64,000 nucleotides of DNA from the NCBI GenBank assembly GCA_002269645.1, contig NIVC01000280.1, positions 124,001 to 188,000 of the forward strand, given 5' to 3'. Of this stretch, positions 6,159 to 40,778 are shown in pieces; position 1 is the stretch's first letter; the number at the start of each line of letters is the position of its first letter. This stretch comes from Macrostomum lignano (Eukaryota). Below the pieces are notes generated by a model. It was not told where the DNA came from, did not search any database, and saw only the letters and a program-made list of their open reading frames with translations. A program made the translations under genes and the position numbers.

Positions 6159-6339
6159 TTTGTCGGTTTCACAAGCTGCTTGAATTATTTTTAATAATTC
6201 GCTCGTATATAGCTGAGAGCTCGTGGGGAGTCTTATATACATCTATTTTGAGAGTCGTATTACAAGGTACGTTTGGTAGTGTACATATTTTTTACTAAAT
6301 TGGTGCTATCCTGTACATTACTGTACAAATCTTGCTTGA

Positions 6340-7696: not shown

Positions 7697-8245
7697 TCAG
7701 CAATCGCTTAGAGAAACTGTCATCTCGGACTCAGTCCAGTCAGGCCCAGCGTCCCGGACTTGTCCTCCACCATAGCTTGGTTCCAGCGGATGTCCAGACC
7801 GCGGGCCGCCGTCTCGCTCTCGACGGCGCGTCAGGCGTCGTTTCTGATAGGCCACAAAAAGTACAGCTCCGGCCATGGCAACGCCCGCCGCCAGAGCGCC
7901 GAGCCCGCCCAGGCCGAGGCGCCGCTGTCCTTCCGCGTTCTTCTTGCTGGCCTCGGCCGCGCACTCCGGGTGCACCAGCTGGAAGGCCCGCCTGTAGAGC
8001 CAGTCCAGCCGGCCAGGAGGTTTTCCGCTGTCCGGTTCAGAGCTCGGACACGGCCTGCACTCGGGCTCGGCTAGGACGGACAGCAGCGACGGCCTGGCCA
8101 GGTAGCTGCCTGGGGGGCAGCCGGACGCTCTGCTCTTGAACAGCCGGGAAGCCCGGATGCTGGCCGATCCGGCCGGACTGAGGCTCAGGTTCAGCAGGAG
8201 CAGCGCGCACAGCACCGACAGTTTCGTTGCCGACGCGCGCTGCAT
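7697..8245 (-). CDS. Intronless type I membrane protein with TNFR/furin-like Cys motif (cluster gene B)
   Basis: Signal peptide; CPPGSYL...ECRPC plus one further Cys; TM LGLGGLGALAAGVAMAGAVLFVAY; basic stop-transfer QKRR; tail contains PLEPSY. Confidence 0.8.
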   Translation of the reverse strand: MQRASATKLSVLCALLLLNLSLSPAGSASIRASRLFKSRASGCPPGSYLARPSLLSVLAEPECRPCPSSEPDSGKPPGRLDWLYRRAFQLVHPECAAEASKKNAEGQRRLGLGGLGALAAGVAMAGAVLFVAYQKRRLTRRRERDGGPRSGHPLEPSYGGGQVRDAGPDWTESEMTVSLSDC

Positions 8246-8431: not shown

Positions 8432-8750
<319 letters not shown>

Positions 8751-9235: not shown

Positions 9236-9883
9236 TCAGTTAATTTCTTCATTGTCCACAGTTGAGGCGCCGGCATATGCCGCAATCGGTGTCTCTGCAG
9301 CTGCCAGCGGGTCTTCTTCTCTGGCATCAAATCCGGAATGTTCCTGCAACGCTAATTGCTGCTCCGGTGGAGTCGGTAGCGGCCTGCTCTGCACGGGAGT
9401 GGCGACTGCCTCAGTCATCGGCTGCTGCTCTGGCGTCTGCTCACTACGGGAAGTCGTGCGGAGACGAGTGGAGCTGCCAGTTGACTGCCTGAGCATGGAT
9501 TTTAGCTCGATCTTTTTCACTCGCTTCAAAAGCCAAGCAATCAAAGCGGCAACTCCGGTGAGAACTGCCACGAATGAGCAGACGATGATGACCAGCAACC
9601 AGGTTTCTTCGCTTAAAAAGACGGAGACTGCGCTTGACTCATCCAAAGGTGCTGGCAGTGTTGAAGACTCACGAGATGTGAATCGGTCACCAGGCGCTGG
9701 TGTTGTCATGGTTACGCTGCTCAACGCTGGTGGCTGCGTCAAGACGCACTGGCCAATGTGAGGGTCGAACTTGGTGTTCTCGGGACACACCGGATAAGCG
9801 AAGACGAAGTTCAACAGATGCGTACATAGCAGAGCGAGCAGTCTAGCGAAAATGTTTAACAAGCGCTTCATGTTTACAGCCAT
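9236..9883 (-). CDS. Intronless type I membrane protein with minimal Cys module (cluster gene C)
   Basis: Signal peptide; CPENTKFDPHIGQC; S/T/P stalk; TM WLLVIIVCSFVAVLTGVAALIAWLL; KRVKK; tail with RPLPTPP and AAYAG. Confidence 0.85.
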   Translation of the reverse strand: MAVNMKRLLNIFARLLALLCTHLLNFVFAYPVCPENTKFDPHIGQCVLTQPPALSSVTMTTPAPGDRFTSRESSTLPAPLDESSAVSVFLSEETWLLVIIVCSFVAVLTGVAALIAWLLKRVKKIELKSMLRQSTGSSTRLRTTSRSEQTPEQQPMTEAVATPVQSRPLPTPPEQQLALQEHSGFDAREEDPLAAAETPIAAYAGASTVDNEEIN

Positions 9884-10395
9884 GTCGAGTAGTCAGGGAT
9901 TGTTCTAAAATTTGTCTTTAACGATCGATGCGTTTTATGTTTTCTCCACGGCTGGTCCATGGAGAATCTGTGGCAATTCATTCTTGTTTAGTGAATGCCA
10001 TCAAGTTTAAGGCGTGTTATATTGGAGCATTATGTAATACGAGCTATAATAGCTATTACTTATATATATATACATCATATATAGCAGCAAAGCTTCAAAT
10101 ACAATGGCATATTCCATAGCAATGCGTGAGGCTATTTCTAGAAATTACGAGGTACGACCCCATTGATTCGGTTTGCATAGATGAGCCTGCCGTGTGTGTA
10201 GCAGTTGGTCCTTATTTCATACTGAGCTTACCTTTTTAATAAAATATTTTACAAAAAACGATTACCCTAAAAAGTTTGTTGAAACTGAGGTCAACAACTT
10301 CATCGACAAAAATTTTGGTTCTAAACCAAAAAACGCAATGAGAAAATGATTAATCTTACTCAAAAACCTCAAGTGTACTGTTACTAAGCGACTAA

Positions 10396-10833
10396 ATGCA
10401 CATGCTGGTGCCGGAACGCCAGAGGGCGGCGCTGTTCCAGGCGGTGATCGAGACCGTCCTGTTATACAACGCCGAGACCTGGACGCTGACAGACTCGCTC
10501 GAGGCTCAAGTTGACGCGGCGCACGCTGGCCTGCTGCGCGCCGCCTTCAAGATCGGCAACGAGCGAGTCAACAACACGGCGCTCTATCATCGCGCCGGCC
10601 TGGCCCGTCCTAGCGATCTGCTGCGCCGTCGGCGACTCCAGCTGGCAGGCGCCGAGGCCTACTGTCCGGAGCCGGTGCAGGAGGTGCTGCTACTTACGTT
10701 GCAGGCACCCTACCGGCGGGGACAGGCGAGGACTCGGCGCTACGTCGACTGTCTGCTGGCTGACGCCGGCGCCCCGGACTCTGCCGGCGGTGCGGCCTTT
10801 GTTCGCGCCCAAGCTTCGAAGCGAGCCATCTGA
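10396..10833 (+). mobile_element. Non-LTR retrotransposon fragment (C-terminal part of the RT-containing ORF)
   Basis: LFQAVIETVLLYNAETWTLT...LLRAAF resembles the post-RT LLYGxETW motif of LINE ORF2 proteins; GC-rich island in AT-rich DNA. Confidence 0.75.
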
Positions 10834-10899
10834 CGCTGCTTTTGCGAACTGACAGCGTACTCTGTTGTTGTTGTTGTTGTTGGTGTCATTTACAAATTT

Positions 10900-11050
10900 T
10901 TCTGAGCAGAGCCAGTTTGACATTGGTAAAACAGAGCGAAACCTGCACACAAGAGCAAAGGAACATTTCAAAAAGTGTCCACTGTGCATGATCACCTCGT
11001 GTGCAACCACTGTACACAACGCTAATAGCCGCAACAGCCAACTATATGAC
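10900..11050 (+). mobile_element. GIY-YIG endonuclease remnant, Penelope-like
   Basis: Translation DIGKTERNLHTRAKEH matches the (Y)IGxTxRxLxxRxxEH GIY-YIG motif. Confidence 0.55.
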
Positions 11051-11560
11051 AGAGTGACTGGTGTGCATTTAAAGATTTTCTGACTTTTCTTATTTTTATA
11101 CTGTCCACCACAAATTTTTGGGCGTTTCACCGTGCACCCACTTTCTTTCATCCACTTATCTCGGTTTTCGTTTAATCTGTCAGTAATAATATGTTGTAAC
11201 GTTCTTGTATCTTGATTACGTTGTTTTTATTATCTCTAAATTCAATGTAGATTGTAGATATACAATATTTCAATTTTACATTGCGGCTGTCTTTGAAGTT
11301 CAAGAAGTACTTCGTTCATCCGGTCAGAACATTATTTTTCATTATTATTACTTCGTATCAATTAACGGGCATCAATTAAATAAGGGTACATATGGTACTG
11401 ATATGTATATTTCACAGTATAAGCTGAATTATTTGATTTAATTGATACAACGAAGGAAAAACAAACAAATATATTAATTTTTTCTACTCATATATTGCAT
11501 TAAATATTGTAAAAAGTCTGCATTTATATAACTTGAACTATAATACGATATTCGCAGCTG

Positions 11561-12311
11561 TCAACTACCCAGTCCCGCGTACTCCGGTCGCACAGGGTCC
11601 CTGACCAGCAGATTGAATGCCTCTGCACCATCTGGCCCATCGTCATGTTGAACGTCCTGAAGGAGCTCTTCCTCAGGGACAGGTGGCAGCGGCCACTTGT
11701 TGATCACTGGGACCAGATTACCACCTGAGAAAGTTTAAAGTTAAGTCTTTAGGAACGAAAGCTCACGAGATCAAACCTGTCGATCCTCATGAACAGAATG
11801 AACTACATGTAAATTCAGTAGTTAGTTACAGACAATACAACAAAACATTAGAGCTCTCACCGAAAGGTTCGGGACTGCCAATGCTGATTTTACCGCTGTC
11901 ACAACCATCATTGTTAATGTTTCCAGACTCAACATCTGTTCTTGACCAGGTGAGCAGCTTGTCCTGACGCTTCTGTCTAACCAAAGTCACCAATCGGTAC
12001 AACAACATTCCGAAAGCCGCCATACCAGCAAGCGCCAGTAGTGCAATTATGCTCGGCGTCAGTCTCTCTGTCGAGGGATTTTGCGACGTACTAATGACGT
12101 GGTTCATTGTCGAGTCTGTGGAAATCTGACCAATCCATCCAGTGGTCAAAGCGTCGAACTTTGGTAGAGGCTGAAGTTGCACGCACATGCTGATGCTGGG
12201 GTCGAAGCGCTGATTGACCGGGCAGTCTGCTGTTCTTGTTGCATCATTCAAAGCCGCAACCATTAGCAATAACAGGGACCAGGTCTCCCATGGTGACTTG
12301 AAAATCAGCAT
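11561..12311 (-). CDS. Two-exon type I membrane protein with minimal Cys module (cluster gene D); exons 11861-12311 and 11561-11724
   Basis: Signal peptide; CPVNQRFDPSISMC; TM IIALLALAGMAAFGMLLY. Phase-1 donor TTCG|gtgaga (11861/11860) matches acceptor tttctcag|GT (11725/11724), adding GGNLVPVINKWPLPPVPEEELL...VRPEYAGLGS-stop. Confidence 0.8.
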
Positions 12312-12916
12312 ACTTTATTGTTAACTCTGGGAATATCAAACAAAAGTATTTCAAACAATTTTATATTGAGCTCGTGTTAACGTTCTATTAATAGAGACAG
12401 GGCAACTCGGCGTCATGACTCATTCAAGAAAAATTTAATTCATTAATGACTCAAAGCACCACTTGTTCGTTTGCTTCTATGCAGAAACTATTTTAGTCAA
12501 TGACAGGCCCACAAGCCAAGAATACTGAAATATGAGATAAAATTATGAATGAACGAACTACAATGATGCAACGTTATTCGACGTTAAAATTTCGCCAGGT
12601 CACACGCTCCTCGTATTTTCGGCGATGATGAATGCCTAGTCACCAAAAGAGCACTTCTACATGTAAAAGCGCTGTTCGAAATGAAAAAGACATCAAAATA
12701 CTGTGGATTCTAAGGTGTGCTTAAGCAGTCTCTCAAAGTTTTTCGGGTCCAAAGCTATGAGTTATGCTTTCTCTACATAATCTTCCCGCTTAATACCAGT
12801 TCAAATTTTTGAGTTGCAAACTTTTGTACAATAGATACGAGATCAAAATCATATATCTGAGTCTGCTACGTCTCTTGTCTCTATTTCGTCCTAGAAGGTG
12901 GAATGAGTAGAACTAG

Positions 12917-13855
12917 TCATGAGTGAGTCATGAGCAGAACTGGTGATGGGTGAGTCATGAGAAGAGCTGGTGATAGTTGAGTCATGAGCAGAGCTGGTGA
13001 TGGGTGAGTCATGAGCAGAGCTGGTGGTGGGTGAGTCATGAGCAAAACTGGTGATAGGTGGGTCATGAGCAGAGCTGGTGATGAGTGGGTCATGAGCAGA
13101 GCTGGTGATAGGTGGGTCATGAGCAGAGCTGGTGATGAGTGAGTCATGAGCAGAGCTGGTGATGGGTGAGTCATGAGCAGAGCTGGTGATGAGTGAGTCA
13201 TGAGCAGAGCTGGTGATGAGTGAGTCATGAGCAGAGCTGGTGATGGGTGAGTCATGAGCAGAGCTGGTGATGGGTGAGTCATGAGCAGAGCTGGTGATAG
13301 GTGGGTCATGAGCAGAGCTGGTGATAGGTGAGTCAGGAGCAGAGCTGGTGATAGGTGAGTCATGAGCAGAGCTGGTGATGGGTGAGTCATGAGCAGAGCT
13401 GGTGATAGGTGAGTCATGAGCAGAGCTGGTGATAGGTGGGTCATGAGCAGAGCTGGTGATGGGTGAGTCAGGAGCAGAGCTGGTGATGAGTGGGTCATGA
13501 TCAGAGCTGGTGATGAGTGGGTCATGATCAGAGCTGGTGATAGGTGAGTCAGGAGCAGAGCTGGTGATGAGTGGGTCATGATCAGAGCTGGTGATAGGTG
13601 AGTCAGGAGCAGAGCTGGTGATGAGTGGGTCATGATCAGAGCTGGTGATAGGTGAGTCAGGAGCAGAGCTGGTGATGAGTGGGTCATGATCAGAGCTGGT
13701 GATGAGTGGGTCATGATCAGAGCTGGTGATAGGTGAGTCAGGAGCAGAGCTGGTGATGAGTGGGTCATGATCAGAGCTGGTGATGAGTGGGTCATGATCA
13801 GAGCTGGTGATGGTGAGTCATGAGCAGAGCTGGTGATGGTGAGTCATGAGCAGAA
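12917..13855. repeat. 27-bp minisatellite (GTGAGTCATGAGCAGAGCTGGTGATGG), ~35 units
   Basis: Tandem units read directly; many carry TGAGTCA. Confidence 0.97.
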
Positions 13856-14339
13856 CTAGTTGCATTAAGACGATAGCAAGATAACACTAAATACCAAGTC
13901 AGCTCGAACAGTTGGCATTGAAATTAGCTATTCTGAAGAGATTACAGACCCATTATGAAATTAATCTATGACACGCTGCTTCGGCCGTGTCATCGAAAAA
14001 GTGCACAATCAATAAGAAATATATACTGTTATATTGTGCCCCGAAAGGGCCGTTTTCTGTTTCAACAGCGGCGATTAAATTAAGCAAACGAAAAAGAAGA
14101 ATTCACATTAATGTAAAGTAATTTCGATTTCTTAAAAACTGTTGTTAGAATGAATGCTCTGACAAAACAGAAAAAACTTTCAAAAATACTTTCTGTGGAA
14201 AATAATACTGAATGAACGAAGATTGCATAATCAATACGAGCGTAATAGTTATCAATAATAATATTTGATTAGACCTGCCCCAATTCGCCAGATGTGCAAA
14301 CGACAGCTCAGCCGCAGCTATTGCGCAGTAGGGGGGGAG

Positions 14340-14512
14340 TCGCCACACACACCCTCAGTTACCCCAGCTAATGCTGGCACCCACTTTACAGCTGGGTGAA
14401 CTGAAGCAACGCAGAACTAAGCATCTTGCTCAAGGACACAAATTGTTCCGAGTGGGTCGAGAATCGAACCCCCGACCTTTCAGTCGTGAGTCTGACGCTC
14501 TAACCACTAGGC
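14340..14512 (-). mobile_element. tRNA-derived SINE with a conserved central domain (V/Meta/Nin-like, family uncertain)
   Basis: Minus strand has A box TAGTGGTTAGAGCG and B box GGTTCGATTCT, followed by GTGTCCTTGAGCAAG...TTGCTTCAGTTCACCCAGCTGTAAAGTGGGTGCC; related partial copy at 33744-33802. Confidence 0.75.
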
Positions 14513-14743
14513 AACAATCCCACTAGGCTACAACCCCCACAAGGCTACAACCCCCACAAGGCTACAACCCCCTCTAGGCTACAACCCCCTCTAGGCTACA
14601 ACCCCCTCTTGGCTACAATAGATGGAGGGTTGTAGCCAATAGTCGAGAATGCTTCTAGCATTTTATGATTCATTCAAATATGAATAGATTACCGTGCATA
14701 TTCAACAATCGCAGAGCCAAATCTTCTATAAAAAAGCATGCAT

Positions 14744-15457
14744 TTAAGCTGAGTCATGGGTACTCTCAGGACATGCAGATCTACGAACTGACCCATTTTT
14801 CTGATACACAATCGAATTCATAACTGTGTTCGCTCGCTGCTCGTTTCCATGGTGATTTGCAGGCTGACTCGCTGACGCAAATTCGCGCTCTTCTGTCTGC
14901 TGAGAAGCTGGAGAGTCGGTTCCAGCTGACTGGCCGGCTGCTGCATCGTGTTGGTTGCCATCGCAACTCGGATGTAGAAACGATCTACGCTCTTCATCAC
15001 AAGGCGACGCTGCTACGTCGGTGTTGACATCAGGTGGAACTGAAGCTGATGAGCCCTTTGCGGCCTGCCTTTCTCCCTGCCTGGCTCTGACAAACTTCGT
15101 GTACAGCAGAATGAGAGCCAGGATTTGAACTGTCAGAAGACCAGCAAGCACGAGCGCACCGATGACGATCCAAATGGTTGATTCACCAGCTGCCTGAGCT
15201 GGTGAGCTCGCTGTAGCGTCTGGACGCCACTCGTCAGGGGCGCCTCTCCGCTCGCCTGTCGAGTTGGCAACGCAGCAGACTGGATGGTTGCGACAGGTGC
15301 TCAGGTAGTGCAGGTGGACTTGGATTTCCGGTGAAGGCAGCGGGCAGCGGAGGCACATCTGCTGGCCCGAGTCGAAATACTCGCCAGCCTTTGAGCAGGT
15401 GTTGCCGTAAGCTTGAGCAGCTAGCAGCAATGTGATTAGAACTGACAAGATACTCAT
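14744..15457 (-). CDS. Intronless single-CRD TNFR-like type I membrane protein (cluster gene E)
   Basis: Signal peptide; CSKAGEYFDSGQQMCLRC...CRNHPVCC (6 Cys); TM IWIVIGALVLAGLLTVQILALILLY; ~115-aa tail. Confidence 0.88.
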   Translation of the reverse strand: MSILSVLITLLLAAQAYGNTCSKAGEYFDSGQQMCLRCPLPSPEIQVHLHYLSTCRNHPVCCVANSTGERRGAPDEWRPDATASSPAQAAGESTIWIVIGALVLAGLLTVQILALILLYTKFVRARQGERQAAKGSSASVPPDVNTDVAASPCDEERRSFLHPSCDGNQHDAAAGQSAGTDSPASQQTEEREFASASQPANHHGNEQRANTVMNSIVYQKNGSVRRSACPESTHDSA

Positions 15458-16280
15458 GTTGAAGTCTTGAAAATTTTTTGTAAGGTTAGCTCTGTGAATC
15501 TTTCAAATTTTGTCATACTGGAGCTCAGTAAAATAATGAGTCAGTTCCAGGTACAATGTACAGTAAATGCTTGACTGATAATCTATTTTTACCCATTACC
15601 CGTCTCAACTTCGGTCAGTGACAGTGTTTCAATCTGAGAGCGCTGTGACACAGTTGAGCACACAAGAGAGCTCATTGCTGTGTACTCAGAACTGCACAGT
15701 GCAGAGTACAGTGAGAGAAATTAGCGGTGTATCTCAACGGTAATGGTTGTGTACTGCCCTAACAATGTTTTTAGATTAGCTATTCAGTACATGTACTGGA
15801 CACTTTTTATAGATTATTTTCTTTGTTTATTTTCCTTAAATTTCTACTGTCAGTAGAGTAACAGATAAAAGTTTAGTATAATTTAGACCAGGTGTTTTTG
15901 TTGTACGAAAATGTATCTAGATACGTACATTGTAAGCTTTTTTAATCTTAAAGACTCGTGATTACCTTCAAAAGATTCAAACAAAAAAGGTCGTTAAAAC
16001 GCTCAAGGAAAGTACAGAGGCTTCGGTCTGCCTGGTTCGTCTTATACATGTATTTCAAATTAGGTTAGGGAAATCACCGAGATTGCTGTTGGTTCTGCAG
16101 TGAGTCAAACCGAATTGTAGAAAATCAAGCTTCCGAAAAATGCTCTGAAATTAACCTAACATGAATAACATAAATAACCGATCAGGACAAATAAATTATT
16201 TGGCTTTTTGATTGACAGTGCACAACAGAGAAAAATATGGGAGATTATTTCTTGGATAGTATAGCCAGCTTTAAGCGAGT

Positions 16281-16949
16281 TTAAGATGTGACAGCAAAGG
16301 CAGTCTCGTAGGTACCAGTCGTGTCTTCATCACCATCAGCATAAACGGGTCGGTTCCGATCTTCCAGAGCAGTCTGGAGCAGCTGCAGGCTCGCCTCTCC
16401 ATCTCGGTCTTCAGGAAAGCCGCTGCCTGTCACGGAGCCGGGCGCGCCGCCAGTGATTTCTGCGGCGTTTCCGTCCTCCTCGCCTGTCCTGAAGTCGTGC
16501 GGTAATTCTTGGCTCTTGTGAGAAAACTTCCACACACCGAGCATGATCAAAGCAATGGCCAGGACAGGAGCGGCTGCGCCGAAAACCATCCAACTGGTTG
16601 ACATCCCCTGGGCCTGGAGCGGTGAGCTCAAAGTTGTGGTGCCGCTGCTGCAACTGCTGCTGCTGCTGCTGCTGCTGTGCGGCGGCTTCCAGCTGGGAAC
16701 AGCTGTCGACCCGGATGTTGTGTTGGCAACGCAGCAGACTGGATGGTCGCGACAGGTGCTGAGGTAGTGCAGGTGGATTAGGATTTCCGATGAAGGCAGC
16801 GGGCAGCGGAGGCACATCTGCTGGCCCGGGTCGAAGTACTCGCCAGCCTTTGAGCAGGTGCGGTTGCCAGCTTGTGCGGCGAGCAGCAGTGTGAATAGAA
16901 TTGAAAAGCTGACGGCGGCAGCTTTATTGATTTTGCACATGAAGATCAT
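16281..16949 (-). CDS. Intronless single-CRD TNFR-like type I membrane protein (cluster gene F); ectodomain like E/G, tail like H
   Basis: Likely start at ATG 16949 or 16940; signal peptide; CSKAGEYFDPGQQMCLRC...CRDHPVCC; poly-Ser stalk; TM WMVFGAAAPVLAIALIMLGVW; tail FSHKSQELPH...NRPVYADG. Confidence 0.85.
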   Translation of the reverse strand: MIFMCKINKAAAVSFSILFTLLLAAQAGNRTCSKAGEYFDPGQQMCLRCPLPSSEILIHLHYLSTCRDHPVCCVANTTSGSTAVPSWKPPHSSSSSSSSCSSGTTTLSSPLQAQGMSTSWMVFGAAAPVLAIALIMLGVWKFSHKSQELPHDFRTGEEDGNAAEITGGAPGSVTGSGFPEDRDGEASLQLLQTALEDRNRPVYADGDEDTTGTYETAFAVTS

Positions 16950-17298
16950 CGTTTTTGAGTTGTCTGAAGATTTTATTAAGCACTTGACAAGTTTAATGTC
17001 TGCTTTTAAAGGTTTATCTAGACTAAGACAAGTAAAATTTAGTTCCAAGTCCAAAAAGGTTTTTCCGCGGAAAAACCGTATGGTTGCACGTACATTTATT
17101 TCTATTTATAGAGAATTCGTCACTTAGGGGCTTTCAGACAGAGATAGGCAGAGCCACTCACTGTGTGTTGAGCGAGATGGAGCGCCATTGTGTCAAGGAC
17201 TACTTAAGTATTTATTCTGATATTTGTACAAGGCTGTTACGCAAAAAATGGTTGAATTCAATCAGTTTTATACAATCGCAGTTTGTAAATTTTTAAGA

Positions 17299-18650
17299 TC
17301 AATTTTCAGCATTTTCAACAGAGCTGAGACGCTCATAGCCAGCATCTGAGGAGCTGTCGATTACCTCCTGAGGCTCAGGGGCGGCAGTTGTTGCGGCTCG
17401 AGGCTGCCGATTGCAGCGCCAGACCATCACCACCAGCAGCCCCAGGAGAAGGACCACCGCTGACCAAGAAGCGACCAGCAAAACCATCAATGCAAACTGA
17501 GTGTCAGTCCTGTCAGTCTCACCGGTTGACAGCGTAGATGGCGTCCCGCTGGGGTTCGAACTGGCGGACCGCAGTTCTGCCCTGGTCGCTCCGTCGGGGC
17601 ATCGGACGCAGAGGTTCTGGCCGGGGTCGTAGCAGCGGCCTGTGGGGCGGGGAGAGGCGGGGGTCGCTAAAGAAATTCTGAAGTCAATTTTGCAGTGGCG
17701 AATGGCGCGGCCCGGGAACTTTATGGGGAATATCGGGAGGGAGTGGTGAATATTGAGGATGGGGGATATCGGGGATGGGGGATATCGGGGATGGGATATC
17801 GGGGATGGGGGATATCGGGGATGGGATATCGGGGATGGGGGATATCGGGGATGGGGAAAATCGGGGATGAGGAAAATCGGGATGGGGATATCGGGGATGG
17901 GGGATATCGGGGATGGGGGATATCGGGGATGGGATATCGGGGATAGGGGATATCGGGGATGGGATATCGGGGATGGGGGATATCGGGGATGGGGGAATCG
18001 GGGATGGGTAAAATCGGGGATGGGGGATATCGGGGATGGGATATCGGGGATGGGGGATATGAAAGTATTGGGAATATCAGGGGATGGAAATATCGGGGAT
18101 GGAGAGTATCAGGGATGGGAAAAATCGGGGATGGGGGATATCGGGGATGGGGGATATCGGGGATGGGATATCGGGGATGGGGGATATCGGGAATGGGGGA
18201 TTTCGGGGATGGGGGATATCGGGGATGGGGGATATCGGGGATGGGATTTCGGGGATGGGGGATATCAGGGATGGGAATTAAATAAAAAGGGAGTTATCGG
18301 AGATTGGGAATAACTGGGGATGGTGAATATTGGGGGGATGGGGTTTCTTGGAACACTGCTCGAGCTTAGTTAATGTTGACTAGATTATTAGTAAAAAACA
18401 TTTTTTACAACTTTCCAAAGCAATGGAGCAATGGAAAATTTCTATAAATTAGCTCGTAGTGTTGCAATACATATGAATATTTGCGTCACTTTTAATTTTA
18501 GAAACAACACACGTGTGCACATAAGAAAGGGAATAACGTCAAATAGCTTGAAATAAAATTTTATCTGCTTGAAAAAAATTAAAAGAAAAAATATTTCGAA
18601 ATGCTTGACTCACCTGGCCGCCCGGAGCAGACAGCAGACTCAGACAGCAT
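17299..18650 (-). CDS. Predicted two-exon, signal-peptide-less single-CRD membrane protein (cluster gene I); exons 18614-18650 and 17299-17639, ~125 aa
   Basis: ATG...CCAG|gtgagt (phase 1) joins the pyrimidine-rich acceptor cgcctctccccgccccacag|GC, giving MLSESAVCSGRPGRCYDPGQNLCVRC...TM(LMVLLVASWSAVVLLLGLLVVMVW)...PQEVID...YERL. An alternative in-frame acceptor lies at 17666. Confidence 0.7.
17750..18330. repeat. G-rich satellite (GGGGATATCG variants) inside the predicted intron of gene I
   Basis: Tandem imperfect units. Confidence 0.95.
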
Positions 18651-18691
18651 AGCGACAGACAGCTTGCAGCTGAATTCCCAGCGCGCCCAGG

Positions 18692-18697
18692 TTTATA
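18692..18697 (-). promoter_or_regulatory. Candidate TATA box (TATAAA) for gene I
   Basis: TATAAA on the minus strand ~42 nt upstream of ATG 18650. Confidence 0.45.
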
Positions 18698-19144
18698 AGC
18701 TTTTGAGGCCAAGTCAGAGATAAGATAGCAAACATGGAGTTTAGTTGGGTGTAATATTTTTAGAGGAAATATATAATTTTTGGTCAAAGTTAGCGATCAA
18801 TAAATTAATTTATTAAAAATAAATATACTCAGCAACATTGAAAAGTCGCCACTCTATGCGCCACCAGTTAGCGATTTCTCTTGGACTGTTCTGAAATCAA
18901 AGATACGAGAAAACTGATCGGGGTAGCTTTAATCTGTAGCGTTAACCCTCGCACACCGCACCCCCCACTTCATTCCTCAACTCAAGTCTGCCCAGGCGTA
19001 GCTAATTTGCGTCACTCGCAAAGATTGAGAGACTTCACCTGCACTCACTCTCAATCTTCTGTGATGGCGACTTTTCGATGTTGCTGAATATACGAGTATT
19101 TGACGTTAGACAAGTGGTCTCTAGGCTGAATATCAAAAAAGCTG

Positions 19145-20135
19145 TTAGTTGATGACGGCAGGCTTGTGACGATGGCAGCTACTCGCATGGATTTGTAGGC
19201 TGGCTGGTCTGCGTGACTCTTTGCTGAGATTCCGCAGATTCCGCAGATTCCGCATGTTCCGCAGATTCCGCATGTTCCGCAGATTCCGCAGATTCCGCAG
19301 ATTCCGCAGATTCCGCATGTTCCGCAGATTCCGCATGTTCCGCAGATTCCGCAGATTCCGCAGATTCCGCAGATTCCGCAGATTCCGCATGTTCCGCAGA
19401 TTCCGCAGATTCCGCAGATTCCGCAGATTCCGCATGTTCCGCAGATTCCGCAGATTCCGCAGATTCCGCAGATTCCGCATGTTCCGCAGATTCCGCAGAT
19501 TCCGCAGATTCCGCAGATTCCGCAGATTCCGCAGATTCCGCAGATTCCGCATGTTCCGCAGATTCCGCAGATTCCGCATGTTCCGCAGATTCCGCAGATT
19601 CCGCATGTTCCGCAGATTCCGCAGATTCCGCATGTTCCGCAGATTCCGCATGTTCCGCAGATTCCGCAGATTCCGCAGATTCCGCATGTTCCGCAGATTC
19701 CGCAGATTCCGCAGATTCCGCATGTTCCGCAGATTCCGCATGTTCCGCAGATTCCGCAGATTCCGCAGATTCCGCATGTTCCGCAGATTCCGCAGATTCC
19801 GCAGATTCCGCATGTTCCGCAGATTCCGCATGTTCCGCAGATTCCGCAGATTCCGCAGATTCCGCATGTTCCGCAGATTCCGCAGATTCCGCAGATTCCG
19901 CATGTTCCGCAGATTCCGCAGATTCCGCAGATTCCGCAGATTCCGCATGTTCCGCAGATTCCGCAGATTCCGCAGATTCCGCAGATTCCGCATGTTCCGC
20001 AGGCACCGCAGGCAGTTTACCAGAGGTCGAGGCTGGTTAGCATTGAATAGTTGAATATCATCACCCTGCTGTCCTTGATCTTCCTTCTCTTGACGCCTGT
20101 TAGATCGCGTTGAACGACGCTTGCAATAGCAAACG
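19145..20135 (-). pseudogene. 5'-truncated, frameshifted paralog of gene H with an expanded 9-bp (SAE/HAE) repeat
   Basis: CYCKRRSTRSNRRQ matches H. CGACC-TCTGGT versus CGACCGTCTGGT in H is a 1-nt deletion near 20025. About 86 units of GCAGAATCT/GCGGAACAT type. No signal peptide, CRD or TM. Confidence 0.85.
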
Positions 20136-20214
20136 TGCATACCGTTTAACGGTTACAGATTACCGTGCATATTCAACAATCGCAGAGCCAAATCTTCTAT
20201 AAAAAAGCATGCAT

Positions 20215-20928
20215 TTAAGCTGAGTCATAGGTACTCTCAGGATATGCAGATCTACGAACTGACCCATTTTTCTGATACACAATCGAATTCATAACTGTGT
20301 TCGCTCGCTGCTCGTTTCCATGGTGATTTACAGGCTGACTCGCTGACGCAAATTCGCGCTCTCCTGTCTGCTGAGAAGCTGGAGAGTCGGTTCCAGCTGA
20401 TTGGCCGGCTGCTGCATCGTGTTGGTTGCCATCGTAACTCGTATGTAGAAACGATCTACGCTCTTCATCACAAGGCGACGCTGCTTCGTCGGTGTTGACA
20501 TCAGGTGGGACAGAAGCTGATGAGCCCTTTGCGGCCTGCCTTTCTCCCTGCCTGGCTCTGACAAACTTCGTGTACAGCAGAATGAGAGCCAGGATTTGAA
20601 CTGTCAGAAGACCAGCAAGCACGAGCGCACCGATGACGATCCAAATGGTTGATTCATCGGCTGCCTGAGCTGGTGAGCTCACTTTAGCGTCTGGACGCCA
20701 CTCGTCAGGGGCGCCTCTCGGCTTGCCTGTCGAGTTGGCAACGCAGCAGACTGGATGGTCGCGACAGGTGCTCAGGTAGTGCATGTGGACTTGGATTTCC
20801 GGTGAAGGCAGCGGGCAGCGGAGGCACATCTGCTGGCCCGAGTCGAAGTACTCGCCAGCCTTTGAGCAGGTGTTGCCGTAAGCTTGAACAGCTAGCAGCA
20901 AAGTGAATGGAATTGACAAGATGCTCAT
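20215..20928 (-). CDS. Intronless single-CRD TNFR-like type I membrane protein (cluster gene G), recent duplicate of gene E
   Basis: Same length as E with 25 nt differences in 714 nt (manual count); flanks are also duplicated. Confidence 0.88.
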   Translation of the reverse strand: MSILSIPFTLLLAVQAYGNTCSKAGEYFDSGQQMCLRCPLPSPEIQVHMHYLSTCRDHPVCCVANSTGKPRGAPDEWRPDAKVSSPAQAADESTIWIVIGALVLAGLLTVQILALILLYTKFVRARQGERQAAKGSSASVPPDVNTDEAASPCDEERRSFLHTSYDGNQHDAAAGQSAGTDSPASQQTGEREFASASQPVNHHGNEQRANTVMNSIVYQKNGSVRRSAYPESTYDSA

Positions 20929-21376
20929 GTTGAAGGTCTTGATGACTTTTAATAACAATTTCTGTAAGGTTAGGTCTGTGACTTTTTCAACTTTTCAGAG
21001 CTCAGAAATATAATGAGTCAGTTCCAGGTTCAATTTACAGTGAATGCTTCACTTAGAATCTATTTATATCCATTACTCGTCTCAACACTGGTCAGCGGTA
21101 GTGCTCAATCTGAGAGCACTGTGGTACACTTGAATACTCAGAGAGCTCATTGCTGTGTACTCAGGACTGCACATTGCAGAGTACAGTGAGGGCAATTAGC
21201 GGTGTACCTCAACGGTAACTGTTGTGTAGTGATTTGATAATACATTTATTATCTATTAATTATTAATAATTTATTAGTACTTTTTGCGTATTTTCCTTTC
21301 GTTTTTTCCATATGCGGTTGACGTGCTGATGAAATTTGGAGGCTTGGCAAGGCTGCACTGAGGCACAGTGCTGATT

Positions 21377-21503
21377 GGCGCACAGGGGTGTACTGAATAC
21401 ACTAGCGCTTATGTGGAAAATCCGACCTTCTGGCAGAATCGTTGAATATCTCGACGGTCCTGAGGACTGGCGACTTGATTCCTGTTTGAGAAGGTGCGCA
21501 ACA
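21377..21503. mobile_element. Dispersed repeat; inverted copy at ~31628-31757
   Basis: caggggtgtactgaatacact...gttgaatatctcgacggtcc...gaaggtgcgcaac is the reverse complement of 31628-31757. Absent from the paralogous flank at 15760-16000. Confidence 0.7.
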
Positions 21504-22112
21504 AAAAGTTAGCCCGTCTTCTTGAATTTCGTGTGCCTGTGTTGCTCCGTTCCGGCGCAGCAAAAAAATTGTCAGGGGGTCCCCCTTTTGGTAGTTTGAC
21601 GGGAGGAAAAATGGCTCGCATTGCAAAGCCGCGCCCACACCATTGCAGAGCAGTTTACAATTCAGAAGTTCAGGAGGCGAGAAATTGGGAATTTAGTTCT
21701 AAAAATTATGAAATCTCCCCAATAAATTTCGCAACGCAACGATTTTTTTCAGTCCACCATGAGTAATCGTACGAGTATGGCTTATGCATTCGAACTGGTT
21801 TAGTTTAAGTTTAAAGAAAGTACAGAGGCTTCTGTCTGCCAGGTTCGTCTTATACATGTATTTCAAATTAGGTTAGGGAAATCACCGAGATTGCTGTTGG
21901 TTTTGCAATAAATCAAACCGAATTGTAAAAAAAATCAAGCTTTATCTGACTGAAAAATGCTCTGAAATGAACATAACATGAATAACCGATCAGGACAAAT
22001 TATTTGGCTTTTTGATTGAAAGTGCATAACAAAGAAAAATATGGGAGATTATTGCTTGGATAATACAGTCAACTTTAAGCGAAGTTAGGTGTGACGCCTA
22101 AGGCACAGACTC

Positions 22113-22961
22113 TTAGGTACCAGTCGCAGCCGTGCCTTCATCACCATCAGCATAAGCGGGTCGGTCCCGGTTTTCCAGAGCAGTCGAAAGAAGCTGCAGT
22201 CTCGCCTCTCCGTCTCGGCCTTCAGGAGAGCCGCTGCCAGTCACCGAGCCGGGCGCACCAGTGATCTCTGCGGCGTTTCCATCCTCCTCGCCTGTGGCGT
22301 TTCCGACCTCCGCGCCTGTCCTGAAGCCGTGCGGTAATTCTTGGCTCTTGTGAGAAAACCTTGTGACTCCTTGCTGAGATTCCGCAGATTCCGCAGATTC
22401 CGCAGATTCCGCAGATTCCGCAGATTCCGCAGATTCCGCAGATTTCGCAGATTCCGCAGATTCCGCAGATTCCGCAGGCACCGCAGGCAGTTTACCAGAC
22501 GGTCGAGGCTGGTCAGCTTTGAGTAGTTTAGTATTATCACCCTGCTGTTCTTGATCTTCCAGCTCTTGACGCCTGTTAGATCGCGTTGAACGACGCTTGC
22601 AATAGCAAACGATGGCAATGATGGCGAAAGAAGCCAAAATCAGCACAACAGGTATCACAATTGGTAGGACAATCGCAAGATTAGGAGAAGACGACAAATT
22701 CGAATCGGACTCAGTAGAAACAGACACCGTAGACGCAGCTTCAGTTGATGATGCCGCCCGCTGGGTAGTCAGGCCGTCTCCGCACTCTCCCAAGTCAATC
22801 TCAGCCTGAGTGCAGTGGACGCACCTGTTCTGGCCCGGGTCCCATCGCATGCCCGGCTGGCACACGCTGACTTCGGCGACGGCCATCAGTGACAGCGGCA
22901 ACAGCTGCAGCAGAAGCAGACAGTGGCCAGCTGGCATTCCGCACTTATCGAATCTCAGCAT
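22113..22961 (-). CDS. Intronless single-CRD TNFR-like type I membrane protein with cytoplasmic (SAE)10 repeat (cluster gene H)
   Basis: Likely start ATG 22961 or 22937; signal peptide; CQPGMRWDPGQNRCVHC...GEC; TM LAIVLPIVIPVVLILASFAIIAIVCYC; KRR; tail ends DRPAYADG. Confidence 0.88.
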   Translation of the reverse strand: MLRFDKCGMPAGHCLLLLQLLPLSLMAVAEVSVCQPGMRWDPGQNRCVHCTQAEIDLGECGDGLTTQRAASSTEAASTVSVSTESDSNLSSSPNLAIVLPIVIPVVLILASFAIIAIVCYCKRRSTRSNRRQELEDQEQQGDNTKLLKADQPRPSGKLPAVPAESAESAESAKSAESAESAESAESAESAESAESQQGVTRFSHKSQELPHGFRTGAEVGNATGEEDGNAAEITGAPGSVTGSGSPEGRDGEARLQLLSTALENRDRPAYADGDEGTAATGT

Positions 22962-23469: not shown

Positions 23470-24365
23470 GGGATAAATGGGATCTCATTGGGATAAATGG
23501 GATCTCATTGGAATAAATGGGATCTCATTGGGATAAATGGGATCTCATTAGGATAAATGGGATCTCATTGGAATAAATGGGATCTCATTGGGATAAATGG
23601 GATCTCATTAGGATAAATGGGATCTCATTGGGATAAATGGGATCTCATTAGGATAAATGGGATCTCATTGGGATAAATGGGATCTCAATGGGATTAATAG
23701 CGTCACACGGGGATAAATGGGATCTCATTGGGATAAATAGCATCACATGGGGATAAATGGGATCTCATTCGGATAAATAGCATCACACGGGGATAAATGG
23801 GATCTCATTGGGATAAATAGCATCACACAGGGATAAATGGGATCTCATTGGGATAAATAGCATCACACGGGGATGAATGGGATCTCATTGGGATTAATAG
23901 CATCACACGGGGATAAATGGGATCTCATTGGGATAAATAGCATCACACGGGGATAAATGGGATCTCATTCGGATAAATAGCATCACACGGGGATAAATGG
24001 GATCTCATTCGGATAAATAGCATCACACGGGGATAAATGGGATCTCATTAGGATAAATGGGATCTCATTGGGATTAATAGCATCACACGGGGATAAATGG
24101 GATCTCATTCGGATAAATAGCATCACACGGGGATAAATGGGATCTCATTAGGATAAATGGGATCTCATTGGGATTAATAGCATCACACGGGGATAAATGG
24201 GATCTCATTGGGATAAATAGCATCACACGGGGATAAATGGAATCTCATTAGGATAAATAGCATCACACGGGGATAAATGGGATCTCATTGGAATAAATAG
24301 CATCACACGGGGATAAATGGGATCTCATTGGGATAAATAGTATCACACGGGGATAAATGGGATCT
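23470..24365. repeat. 20-bp minisatellite with two alternating unit types (GGATAAATGGGATCTCATTG / GGATAAATAGCATCACACGG)
   Basis: Tandem units read directly; abuts the WDR11 stop codon. Confidence 0.97.
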
Positions 24366-24390
24366 CATGTTAAACATCAGTCCGCCGCAG

Positions 24391-33639: not shown

Positions 33640-33743
33640 GGCAACCAGGTGTGGCGCTAAGAGAATCTGTGCAGCTGAAGATGAGGGAGCGCTGGCGACT
33701 TGAGAATACCAAGAGTACAACAGGGATTTCTTATCTTCAACTT

Positions 33744-33802
33744 ATCCTGCTCAAGGACACAAATTGCTTCGAGTCGTGAGTCCGACGCTCTGACCACTAG
33801 GC
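33744..33802 (-). mobile_element. Internally deleted copy of the 14.3-kb SINE, ~100 bp upstream of the WDR11 start
   Basis: ctgctcaaggacacaaattg...gtcgtgagtccgacgctctgaccactaggc matches 14425-14512. Confidence 0.65.
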
Positions 33803-33919
33803 TGCAGCGGATCTATGAGAATTTCCCGCAGGAAGTTTTCCCGCCGAGTTTTTCCCGCCGAGGTTTTCCCGCAGGGTTTTTCCTCTGTCGGGTAAATCTG
33901 GGCGGGGAAATCTCTTGCG

Positions 33920-36649: not shown

Positions 36650-40778
<4,129 letters not shown>

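What the first reader, a model, noticed from the sequence alone, without database searches (positions are those of the whole stretch)
9236..22961. Shared ectodomain motif C-x5/7-[FWY]-D-[PS]-x4-C reproduces the BCMA/TACI cysteine-rich domain spacing
Seen: C CPENTKFDPHIGQC; D CPVNQRFDPSISMC; E/G CSKAGEYFDSGQQMCLRC; F CSKAGEYFDPGQQMCLRC; H CQPGMRWDPGQNRCVHC; I CSGRPGRCYDPGQNLCVRC. Known (from memory): BCMA CSQNEYFDSLLHACIPC and TACI CPEEQYWDPLLGTCMSC have the same aromatic-Asp-x5-Cys-x2-Cys hairpin, which is their ligand-binding loop. The DxL residue needed for BAFF/APRIL binding is replaced here (DSG, DPG, DPH, DPS), and the loop is the most variable part between subfamilies. C and D keep only one disulfide, which would be a minimal hairpin receptor. 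Caveat: C-x12-C loops with FD also occur in peritrophin-A (CBM14) and furin-like repeats.
Basis: partly seen in the sequence, partly recalled or inferred. Interest (0 to 1): 0.8.

Follow-up and report, generated by a model that had tools for sequence, protein, structure and literature searches.

The report
Flatworm membrane proteins with mini cysteine hairpin
A tandem cluster of small surface-membrane genes in the flatworm Macrostomum lignano shares one tiny disulfide-closed hairpin that looks like the ligand-binding tip of the BCMA/BAFF-R immune receptors, but the same hairpin also occurs in chitin-binding domains and many uncharacterised repeat proteins, so receptor status is plausible but unproven.

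Summary
The motif is real. C-x5/6-[FWY]-D-[PS]-x4-C occurs six times in the window against 0.09 expected by chance. Each copy sits just after a signal peptide in a minus-strand single-pass membrane ORF (C, D, E, F, G, H). The seventh copy (I) exists only after removing an intron, whose splice sites are conserved in two other M. lignano copies of the locus.

The window is Macrostomum lignano. UniRef already names the E/G-type proteins 'TNFR-Cys domain-containing'.

The BCMA/TACI reading is only partly supported:
- AlphaFold gives a beta-hairpin followed by a helix, at low confidence.
- The best PDB fold matches are BAFF-R, BCMA and TNFR2, but none is significant (E >= 1).
- No Pfam TNFR, BCMA, TACI or BAFF-R model matches.
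- The tails carry no death domain and no TRAF motifs above chance.
- An exhaustive profile search finds mostly multi-repeat proteins built from the same hairpin. Pfam reads 53 of 61 of these as the C-terminal half of CBM14.
- Profile-profile scores are higher to the CBM14 hairpin (25-35) than to BCMA/TACI/BAFF-R (16-24).

Best reading: a lineage-specific family of mini-ectodomain surface proteins with a TNFR A1-like hairpin. They are possible extra TNF-ligand receptors, at moderate confidence. I rate it a new variant of a known kind, of moderate interest.

The parts
9236..9883 (-). Gene C, 215 aa: signal peptide, 2-Cys hairpin CPENTKFDPHIGQC (9746-9787), S/T/P stalk, TM (about 9539-9601), acidic tail.
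   Evidence: The exact protein is in the database, and its cluster holds two M. lignano alleles/homeologues. dN/dS is about 0.45 against the other copies.
11826..12311 (-). Gene D, 161 aa: signal peptide, 2-Cys hairpin CPVNQRFDPSISMC (12183-12224), stalk, TM (about 11988-12050), short tail.
   Evidence: The hairpin is identical in L001 and L002. dN/dS is 0.35-0.44.
14744..15457 (-). Gene E, 237 aa: signal peptide and a 6-Cys domain (15272-15397) with spacing C-x13-C-x2-C-x16-C-x5-C-C; TM about 15113-15175.
   Evidence: It is 95% identical to P0001, which UniRef names TNFR-Cys domain-containing. AF2 model.
16281..16949 (-). Gene F, 222 aa from the Met at 16949: a chimera with an E-type 6-Cys domain (16731-16856) and an H-type cytoplasmic tail; TM about 16530-16592.
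   Evidence: Self-BLAST: 16716-16911 matches E/G at 88-89%, and 16005-16527 matches H 21813-22359 at 81.6%. The relative P0003 is in NCBI.
17299..18650 (-). Gene I (inferred), 125 aa, two exons (18650-18614 and 17639-17299). No signal peptide. N-terminal 4-Cys motif C-x6-C-Y-D-P-x4-C-x2-C, then a TM helix. The intron holds a 16-nt minisatellite.
   Evidence: Splice sites and exon 1 are conserved in L001 and L002. No annotated protein matches it.
19145..20140 (-). H-like gene fragment: half a TM helix plus the juxtamembrane segment, 93.5% identical to H 22380-22611. It is followed by 43 copies of an 18-nt unit encoding AESAE[SH]. It has no ectodomain and is probably a relic.
20215..20928 (-). 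Gene G, 237 aa from the Met at 20928: a recent duplicate of E (92% nt identity over 1.08 kb); 6-Cys domain at 20743-20868; TM about 20584-20646.
22113..22961 (-). Gene H, 282 aa from the Met at 22961: signal peptide, 4-Cys domain CQPGMRWDPGQNRCVHC-x9-C (22782-22862), stalk, TM (about 22617-22679), AESAES repeats, and a tail shared with F.
   Evidence: AF2 model (hairpin at residues 9-20 of the 45-residue ectodomain fragment that was modelled, helix at 23-27; pLDDT 74-84 over residues 11-30). Foldseek.
7697..8245 (-). Gene B, 182 aa: a possible divergent relative. Same layout (signal peptide, Cys-rich ectodomain, TM, tail) with CPPGSY-x13-C-x2-C-P, but without the aromatic-Asp pair.
   Evidence: The exact protein is in the database. 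Relatedness was not tested beyond inspection.

Best explanation
Shown: the region is a tandem, rapidly rearranging cluster of small single-pass membrane protein genes of Macrostomum lignano. The only conserved extracellular element is one disulfide-closed beta-hairpin, C-x5/6-[FWY]-D-[PS]-x4-C. It sits on a Ser/Thr/Pro-rich, N-glycosylatable stalk.

Inferred: in E/F/G (6 Cys), H and I (4 Cys), the hairpin is followed by C-x2-C and a short helix. That is the layout of a single, reduced TNFR-type cysteine-rich domain: an A1-type hairpin plus a small second module, as in BAFF-R, BCMA or Grindelwald. C and D keep only the hairpin.

The proteins most likely act as cell-surface binding proteins. The hairpin tip (D-P/S-G-Q in five of seven) would contact a protein ligand. 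The expanded TNF ligand family of this species is the best candidate. Signalling, if any, would go through unknown partners, because the acidic, disordered tails carry no recognisable domain.
For: - Motif and architecture. Enrichment of 6 observed against 0.09 expected.
- The species and the UniRef name 'TNFR-Cys domain-containing' for the E/G-type proteins (A0A267EV69, A0A267GKG9).
- The same gene set (H, E-type x2, I, F, D, C) is present next to WDR11 in two other M. lignano contigs. dN/dS is 0.35-0.5 for C and D, so these are coding and mildly constrained.
- AF2 gives a hairpin plus helix for E (pLDDT 57) and H (pLDDT 67, with 74-84 over the hairpin and helix).
- Foldseek against the PDB: 12 of 14 hits for E are TNFR2, BCMA or BAFF-R. 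For H the top hit is BAFF-R (probability 0.47, rmsd 0.8 A over 19 residues, 37% identity), followed by BCMA.
- BAFF-R is the second hit of the family profile in the whole PDB.
- C-x2-C follows the hairpin in 5 of 7 members here, against 36 of 479 (7.5%) generic hairpins.
- Context from the literature: M. lignano has about 10 TNF ligands but only one canonical TNFR has been described (PMC7519573). Grindelwald is a bona fide single-CRD TNFR with a hairpin-plus-helices fold and no DxL motif (PMC8024323).
Against: - All structural and PDB sequence matches are non-significant, and the models are of low confidence.
- No Pfam TNFR-clan model matches any single member.
- Cysteine spacing after the hairpin (E: C-x16-C-x5-CC; H: C-x9-C) differs from BCMA/TACI (C-x3-C-x8-C-x3-C).
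- The DxL ligand-contact motif is absent.
- The tails have no death domain, and TRAF-type motifs are not above shuffle expectation.
- The profile's remote neighbours are overwhelmingly CBM14-like hairpin repeats. hhalign favours the CBM14 hairpin over BCMA/TACI/BAFF-R.
- The aromatic residue is F/L polymorphic in C.
- E, F and G are recent duplicates, so their identity says nothing about constraint.
Confidence: 0.4

Rival explanations
1. The hairpin is a generic, mobile two-cysteine mini-module. It is the same one that forms the C4-C5 hairpin of peritrophin-A/CBM14 domains and that occurs as tandem CPxGxx[FWY]DPxxxxCV repeats in many uncharacterised proteins. On this reading the flatworm proteins are not TNFR relatives. 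The hairpin would bind glycans, or simply cap a mucin-like membrane stalk.
For: - The exhaustive profile search gives 79 hits at E <= 1e-3. Apart from three M. lignano relatives, all are multi-repeat proteins with 2-25 matched stretches.
- Pfam of 61 of them CBM_14, matched at profile positions of about 28-53. Only one hit each matches BCMA-Tall_bind or TACI-CRD2.
- Some hits are genuine six-Cys CBM14 arrays.
- The consensus of 479 such hairpins, C-P-[PA]-G-x-x-[YWF]-D-P-x-[LQT]-[QGN]-[RK]-C-V, fits H, C and D almost residue for residue.
- An artificial C+D concatenate hits CBM_14 positions 31-47 at about 10 bits per hairpin.
- hhalign scores are 25-35 against CBM14 and 16-24 against BCMA/TACI/BAFF-R.
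- One hit (P0083) has the same layout: hairpins, a Pro/Ser linker, then a TM helix.
Against: - No member has the other four CBM14 cysteines, and no member reaches the Pfam CBM_14 threshold.
- No CBM14 structure appears among the Foldseek hits.
- The comparison sets of metagenomic and CBM14 hairpins were selected by the flatworm profile itself. That inflates their hhalign scores relative to the four-sequence BCMA set.
- BCMA/TACI/BAFF-R themselves align to the same hairpins (hhalign 19-22), so the two readings are not mutually exclusive.
- CBM14 proteins are normally secreted multi-domain proteins, not minimal membrane proteins (general knowledge).
Confidence: 0.3
2. These are fast-evolving, lineage-restricted orphan membrane mucin-like genes with no specific ligand. 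The hairpin persists by descent as a small stabilising cap, and several copies are decaying.
For: - No relatives outside M. lignano other than generic hairpins.
- Chimeric F, the H-like fragment with a 43-copy repeat expansion, H truncated to 128 aa in L002, and the F-to-L change in C.
- dN/dS of 0.35-0.8 with few substitutions.
- Low-complexity acidic tails with no domains.
- H, I and F are left unannotated in the other assembly.
Against: - The D-[PS] core and both cysteines are kept in four or five lineages that share nothing else alignable in the ectodomain.
- The same seven-gene set is kept in three copies of the locus.
- dN/dS is below 1 for C and D.
Confidence: 0.2
3. The ectodomains are single furin-like / ephrin-receptor-like (growth-factor-receptor type) cysteine repeats rather than TNFR CRDs.
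For: - An artificial concatenate of four E-type domains gives Ephrin_rec_like as the best Pfam family, at 28 bits in total or about 7 bits per copy.
- ErbB4, HER2, EGFR and insulin-receptor Cys-rich regions appear among the weak Foldseek hits for H, from rank 21.
- Protist-type CxxC..G[YF][YF] repeat proteins such as P0033 are among the profile hits.
Against: - No single protein reaches any threshold.
- These matches rank below the BAFF-R and BCMA matches.
- Furin-like modules normally occur in tandem arrays, whereas here there is a single copy.
- To my knowledge these modules are themselves regarded as TNFR-like, so the distinction is partly semantic.
Confidence: 0.05

Closest known systems
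BAFF-R (TNFRSF13C), BCMA (TNFRSF17), TACI (TNFRSF13B): single or partial-CRD TNF receptors
   Same: - A short N-terminal ectodomain led by a disulfide-closed beta-hairpin with aromatic-Asp before the turn and C-x2-C after it.
- C, D and H have exactly BCMA's C-x5-Ar-D-x5-C spacing.
- These receptors give the best, though non-significant, fold and PDB profile matches.
- The inferred gene I lacks a signal peptide and has a Cys directly before the aromatic, as BAFF-R does (C-x4-C-F-D-x5-C-x2-C).
   Different: - The DxL tip is replaced by D-[PS]-G-Q, D-P-H-I or D-P-S-I.
- The second-module cysteine spacing differs, or the module is absent.
- C to H have cleavable signal peptides (type I, not type III).
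- The Pfam models PF09257, PF09305 and PF09256 do not match.
- TRAF-type motifs are not above chance.
Drosophila Grindelwald / Wengen: invertebrate single-CRD TNF receptors
   Same: - Invertebrate single-CRD membrane proteins with a beta-hairpin followed by helices.
- Grindelwald binds its TNF ligand without a DxL motif and is missed by Pfam TNFR_c6 (PMC8024323; bioRxiv 10.1101/2024.07.27.603686).
- That preprint reports up to 19 wengen-like proteins in one platyhelminth species.
   Different: - Grindelwald has 8 cysteines (X2 + C2 modules); here there are 6, 4 or 2.
- No Grindelwald structure appeared among the Foldseek hits.
- I could not check whether these proteins are among the preprint's 19. 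The accessions are not in the one supplementary file held for that preprint.
Peritrophin-A / CBM14 chitin-binding domain, C4-C5 hairpin
   Same: The consensus C-P-x-G-x-x-F-D-P-x-x-x-x-C-V has identical spacing. It gives the highest profile-profile scores and is the dominant Pfam label of the remote hits.
   Different: - Only one of the three CBM14 disulfides is present.
- There is no N-terminal half of the domain.
- The proteins are membrane-anchored with a single copy of the hairpin.
- There is no Pfam hit at threshold and no CBM14 fold match.
Uncharacterised tandem 'CPxGxx[FWY]DPxxxxCV' hairpin-repeat proteins (mostly metagenomic)
   Same: This is the closest sequence match to the H, C and D hairpins. 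Some of these proteins also have Pro/Ser linkers and a C-terminal TM helix.
   Different: - They carry 2-25 hairpins per protein, and only 7.5% of hairpins are followed by C-x2-C.
- Their origin is unknown, as nearly all come from unnamed metagenome contigs.
- No function is known.

Membership tests
TNFR superfamily cysteine-rich domain | Match to a curated CRD profile (Pfam PF00020 TNFR_c6; PROSITE PS50050) | tested here: inconclusive
   Pfam gives no hit for any member even at E <= 10. PROSITE cannot be run here. UniRef does name the E/G-type proteins 'TNFR-Cys domain-containing', and to my knowledge that name comes from a PS50050 match. C is named only 'Uncharacterized protein'.
TNFR superfamily cysteine-rich domain | N-terminal A1-type module: one disulfide closing a 12-14 residue beta-hairpin with a conserved aromatic | tested here: met
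   The spacing is C-x12-C in C, D and H and C-x13-C in E, F and G, with the aromatic at +6/+7. AF2 predicts the hairpin in E and H. The hairpin superposes on those of BAFF-R, BCMA and TNFR2 at 0.6-0.9 A. This feature is not specific to TNFRs.
TNFR superfamily cysteine-rich domain | Second module with TNFR-type cysteine spacing and connectivity (B2/C2/D2/X2) | tested here: not met
   E-type has C-x16-C-x5-C-C and H has C-x9-C; C and D have none. BCMA has C-x3-C-x8-C-x3-C.
TNFR superfamily cysteine-rich domain | Significant fold similarity to a solved TNFR CRD | tested here: inconclusive
   The top Foldseek hits are TNFRSF members, but with E of 1-10 and probability <= 0.47, from models with pLDDT 57 and 67.
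TNFR superfamily cysteine-rich domain | Binds a trimeric TNF-family ligand | not testable with these tools
   No multimer modelling or binding assay is available. TNF ligands do exist in M. lignano (PMC7519573).
TNFR superfamily cysteine-rich domain | Cytoplasmic death domain or TRAF-binding motifs | tested here: not met
   There are no Pfam domains in the tails. Counts of TRAF2/TRAF6-type motifs are at shuffle expectation.
BCMA/TACI/BAFF-R subgroup | DxL motif at the hairpin tip | tested here: not met
   The sequences read DSG, DPG, DPH and DPS.
BCMA/TACI/BAFF-R subgroup | Match to Pfam PF09257, PF09305 or PF09256 | tested here: not met
   No hits on single proteins. The only signal is 12.7 bits to TACI-CRD2 positions 2-21, on an artificial doubled H+I concatenate. 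hhalign probability to a BCMA/TACI/BAFF-R alignment is 14-83%.
BCMA/TACI/BAFF-R subgroup | Type III topology (no signal peptide) | tested here: not met
   C, D, E, F, G and H have N-terminal hydrophobic signal sequences. Only the inferred gene I lacks one.
CBM14 (peritrophin-A) | Six-cysteine domain (C1-C3, C2-C6, C4-C5) reaching the Pfam PF01607 threshold | tested here: not met
   Only the C4-C5 hairpin equivalent is present. No PF01607 hit on any single protein. There are partial matches to profile positions 31-47 in an artificial concatenate.
CBM14 (peritrophin-A) | Chitin binding | not testable with these tools
   This needs a binding assay.
Furin-like / Ephrin_rec_like repeats | Tandem C-x2-C-led repeats reaching the Pfam threshold | tested here: not met
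   Each protein has a single copy. The score is about 7 bits per copy, and only in a four-fold concatenate.

The most novel reading that the evidence does not exclude
The cluster encodes the 'missing' receptors for the expanded TNF ligand family of M. lignano (about 10 ligands, one canonical receptor described). It would form a graded series from a 6-Cys CRD through a BAFF-R-like 4-Cys half-CRD to a 2-Cys hairpin (C, D). That hairpin would be the smallest TNF-receptor ectodomain known. The series would show how a receptor domain can be whittled down to one beta-hairpin, or built up from a generic hairpin module shared with CBM14.
Probability: 0.15. Interest if true: 0.75.

Novelty: new variant of a known kind. 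Interest (0 to 1): 0.4.

Why it matters
A published survey credits flatworms with a single NGFR-like TNF receptor, yet M. lignano carries about ten TNF ligands (PMC7519573). A tandem family of mini-CRD membrane proteins would be a natural place to look for the extra receptors. It would also extend the BAFF-R/Grindelwald principle, that one hairpin-centred half-domain is enough to bind a ligand, into Spiralia.

Independently of that, this work shows that the BCMA/TACI hairpin, the CBM14 C4-C5 hairpin and a large set of unannotated hairpin repeats cannot be told apart by sequence. That is a caution for motif-based annotation of TNFR-like proteins in invertebrates. If the proteins are only orphan mucin-like genes, the finding is ordinary.

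Tried and rejected
- Pfam on all full-length members gave nothing relevant. The TMEM154, DAG1 and similar hits on H are TM/low-complexity noise.
- Single-sequence PDB searches of the E, I, H and C ectodomains gave nothing or chance hits: sushi-domain C-terminal hairpins, LIM, pappalysin, an antibody light chain.
- The word-indexed homologue search with the CRD alignment and with the spliced I protein returned nothing. The search with E found only three M. lignano proteins.
- dN/dS among E, F and G is uninformative, with 1-3 synonymous differences in the CRD.
- The TRAF/YxxPhi motif scan of the tails was at chance.
- A literature search for the locus tags found no papers. The supplement of the invertebrate TNFR preprint does not contain the accessions.
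- Concatenating ectodomains to lift weak Pfam signals gave three different answers: Ephrin_rec_like for E-type, TACI-CRD2 for H+I, and CBM_14 for C+D. I treat this as ranking information only, because the E-values of artificial repeats are not valid.
- The disulfide connectivity of the AF2 models could not be inspected, because the coordinates are not exposed.
- A bacterial or phage origin was rejected. The region has introns, minisatellites, and WDR11 and SLC3A-like neighbours, and the proteins match M. lignano.

Full report
**What the window is**

The best protein matches of the ORF at 14744-15457 are three Macrostomum lignano proteins, at 95%, 86% and 39% identity. Exact look-ups place genes C and B on a 722,767-bp M. 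lignano contig. The region is eukaryotic. It has minisatellites, GC-rich exons and neighbouring genes for WDR11, a SacI-domain protein and an alpha-amylase-domain (SLC3A-like) protein. The finding therefore concerns flatworm nuclear genes.

**Checking the observation**

A six-frame scan finds C-x5/6-[FWY]-D-[PS]-x4-C six times, all on the minus strand and all at the quoted places:

| Gene | Motif coordinates |
|---|---|
| C | 9746-9787 |
| D | 12183-12224 |
| E | 15344-15397 |
| F | 16803-16856 |
| G | 20815-20868 |
| H | 22812-22862 |

- Block-shuffled windows give 0.09 matches on average.
- Each motif begins a few residues after a hydrophobic signal sequence. It is followed by a Ser/Thr/Pro-rich stretch, one TM helix and an acidic low-complexity tail.
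- The copies are paralogues, so they are not independent. E and G are 92% identical over 1.08 kb. F's signal-plus-CRD segment is 89% identical to E/G, while F's tail is 82% identical to H's tail, so F is a chimera. Independent lineages are C, D, E-type and H, plus I.

It needs a 37-nt first exon (18650-18614, MLSESAVCSGRP, phase 1) joined to 17639-17299. The GTGAGT donor, the polypyrimidine-CAG acceptor and exon 1 are conserved in two other copies of the locus. That supports the splice, but no database protein matches the product.

TACI CRD1 is not in the PDB, so it could not be checked.

Spacing is identical to BCMA only in C, D and H. E, F and G have one extra residue before the aromatic.

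The claim that the loop is the most variable part does not hold. D-[PS]-G-Q-[QN] is shared by five of the seven copies.

**Other copies of the locus**

Two contigs of assembly GCA_002269645.1 (L001, L002) carry the same gene set next to WDR11: H, two E-type genes, I, F, D and C.

- C and D differ from their counterparts with dN/dS of 0.35-0.5, which indicates coding sequence under mild constraint.
- The aromatic of C is Leu in both other copies.
- H is truncated in L002.
- An H-like fragment with a 43-copy AESAE[SH] repeat sits between G and I in the window.

The family is real but turning over quickly.

**Is it a BCMA/TACI-type or TNFR-type domain? Evidence in favour**

- UniRef names the E/G-type proteins 'TNFR-Cys domain-containing'. 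To my knowledge that name reflects a PROSITE PS50050 match. I could not rerun it.
- AlphaFold2 on shallow alignments predicts a beta-hairpin whose strands end at the Asp and start before C2, followed by a helix. This holds for E (pLDDT 57) and H (pLDDT 67, with 74-84 over the hairpin and helix).
- Foldseek against the PDB returns TNFR2, BCMA and BAFF-R as 12 of 14 hits for E.
- For H, Foldseek returns BAFF-R first (probability 0.47, 0.8 A over 19 residues) and then BCMA.
- BAFF-R is also the second hit of the family profile in a PDB sequence search.
- Five of the seven hairpins are followed by C-x2-C. That is universal in BCMA, TACI and BAFF-R but is seen in only 7.5% of generic hairpins of this type.

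**Evidence against**

- Every one of these matches is statistically insignificant: Foldseek E of 1-10, and E = 2.5 for BAFF-R.
- No Pfam TNFR-clan model matches any member at E <= 10.
- The cysteine spacing of the second half fits neither BCMA/TACI nor the classical CRD pattern.
- The DxL motif is missing.
- The tails have no death domain and no excess of TRAF motifs.

Absence of DxL is not decisive. Grindelwald binds Eiger without it (PMC8024323).

A profile of the seven ectodomains was searched against 1.84 billion representative proteins. It gave 79 hits at E <= 1e-3.

- Apart from three M. lignano relatives, all hits are proteins in which the hairpin part of the profile matches 2-25 times.
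- Their repeats read CPSGEYWDPTQQACV, CPTGQHWDATQNKCV, CPPGQTFDSQANRCV and so on.
- The consensus of 479 such hairpins fits H, C and D nearly residue for residue.
- Pfam labels 53 of 61 of these proteins CBM_14, matched only over profile positions of about 28-53, which is the C4-C5 hairpin. One hit each matches BCMA-Tall_bind or TACI-CRD2.
- Some hits are genuine six-cysteine peritrophin arrays.
- Local hhalign scores of the flatworm sets are 25-35 against CBM14 domains and 16-24 against a BCMA/TACI/BAFF-R alignment.

Two cautions apply to that comparison. The CBM14 set was selected by the flatworm profile itself. The BCMA set has only four sequences and itself aligns to the same hairpins (scores 19-22).

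Artificial concatenates gave Ephrin_rec_like for E-type, TACI-CRD2 for H+I and CBM_14 for C+D. Sequence therefore cannot assign this 14-residue hairpin to one family. It is a recurrent mini-module.

It was not met, because no CBM14 structure appears in either Foldseek list and furin-like regions rank below BAFF-R and BCMA.

**Most likely mechanism**

I commit, at a confidence of about 0.4, to the following. These are lineage-specific surface proteins that display a TNFR A1-type hairpin on a glycosylated stalk.

- In E, F, G, H and I the hairpin is extended by C-x2-C and a short helical element into a reduced CRD.
- In C and D it is reduced to the bare hairpin.

The hairpin tip is the probable binding surface. 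The candidate ligands are the roughly ten TNF-family ligands of this species, for which only one canonical receptor has been described (PMC7519573). A recent preprint reports up to 19 wengen-like proteins in one platyhelminth, so part of this family may already have been counted there. I could not verify that.

The architecture, the conservation of the hairpin, the paralogy and the predicted hairpin-helix are shown. TNFR homology, ligand class and signalling are inferred.

**Rivals**

| Rival reading | Confidence |
|---|---|
| Generic CBM14-like hairpin module with glycan-binding or structural role | 0.3 |
| Decaying orphan mucin-like genes | 0.2 |
| Single furin-like unit | 0.05 |

**A detail worth recording**

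The inferred gene I has no signal peptide. Its cysteine pattern is C-x6-C-Y-D-P-x4-C-x2-C. BAFF-R is also a type III membrane protein, with C-x4-C-F-D-x5-C-x2-C. This is the closest formal parallel to a known minimal TNFR in the cluster, but it rests on an unannotated gene model.

**Verdict**

This is best filed as a new variant of a known kind (single or partial-CRD, TNFR-like membrane proteins), with the caveat that membership is not established. Interest is moderate (0.4). It would rise sharply if ligand binding were shown.

Noticed in passing
window 16005-16949 compared with 14686-15756, 20157-21231 and 21813-22359: Gene F is a chimera. Its signal peptide and 6-Cys domain are 88-89% identical in DNA to E/G. 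Its cytoplasmic tail and 3' flank are 82% identical to H. This points to recombination between paralogues inside a single-exon ORF.
   Followed up: partly
window 19145-20140 (-): An H-like fragment starts mid-TM (…VCYCKRRSTRSNRRQE…) and is 93.5% identical to H 22380-22611. It is followed by 43 copies of an 18-nt unit encoding AESAE[SH]; H itself carries a much shorter run of the AESAES repeat. It is probably a gene relic lying directly downstream of G.
   Followed up: partly
window 9746-9787; L001 from 16244; L002 from 16618: The motif's aromatic residue in gene C is polymorphic or paralogue-specific. It is F in the window and L (CPENTKLDPH[IV]GQC) in both other M. lignano copies.
   Followed up: yes
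L002 4659-5043: The H orthologue in contig NIVC01001652.1 is open for only 128 codons, against 282 in the window and in L001. This is either a pseudogenised copy or an assembly error.
   Followed up: no
window 17299-18650 (-): The inferred two-exon gene I has no signal peptide and a BAFF-R-like four-cysteine pattern. Its 974-nt intron is largely a 16-nt minisatellite (17750-18275). It is not annotated in either assembly.
   Followed up: partly
window 4476-6242 (-) and 7697-8245 (-): Two more type I membrane ORFs sit at the end of the same cluster. A is a 588-aa mucin-like protein with 16.5 copies of a 51-nt repeat; its Pfam PLDc hit is spurious, with no domain passing. B is 182 aa with CPPGSY-x13-C-x2-C-P and may be a divergent family member.
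   Followed up: no
window 24391-33720 (-), 39367-40778 (-), 1474-2601 (+): The flanking genes are a WDR11 homologue (TPR_WDR11 and second beta-propeller hits), an alpha-amylase-domain SLC3A-like protein and a SacI-homology-domain ORF. The WDR11 neighbour is conserved in L001 and L002.
   Followed up: partly
window 10396-10833 (+): This ORF contains …LLYNAETWTLT…, which from memory resembles the C-terminal part of a LINE-type reverse transcriptase. There is no Pfam hit. It is probably a retroelement fragment between genes C and D.
   Followed up: no
window-wide, e.g. 8434-8750, 12903-13854, 23470-24368, 26200-27400, 33800-35500, 48958-51265, 53217-54400: The window holds a very high density of long micro- and minisatellites. 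These create long spurious ORFs in several frames on both strands.
   Followed up: no
proteins P0008-P0083 (search hits, not in the window): A large, mostly unannotated set of proteins is built from tandem two-cysteine hairpins CPxGxx[FWY]DPxxxxCV. Pfam detects them only as partial CBM_14. BCMA, TACI and BAFF-R hairpins align to them as well.
   Followed up: partly
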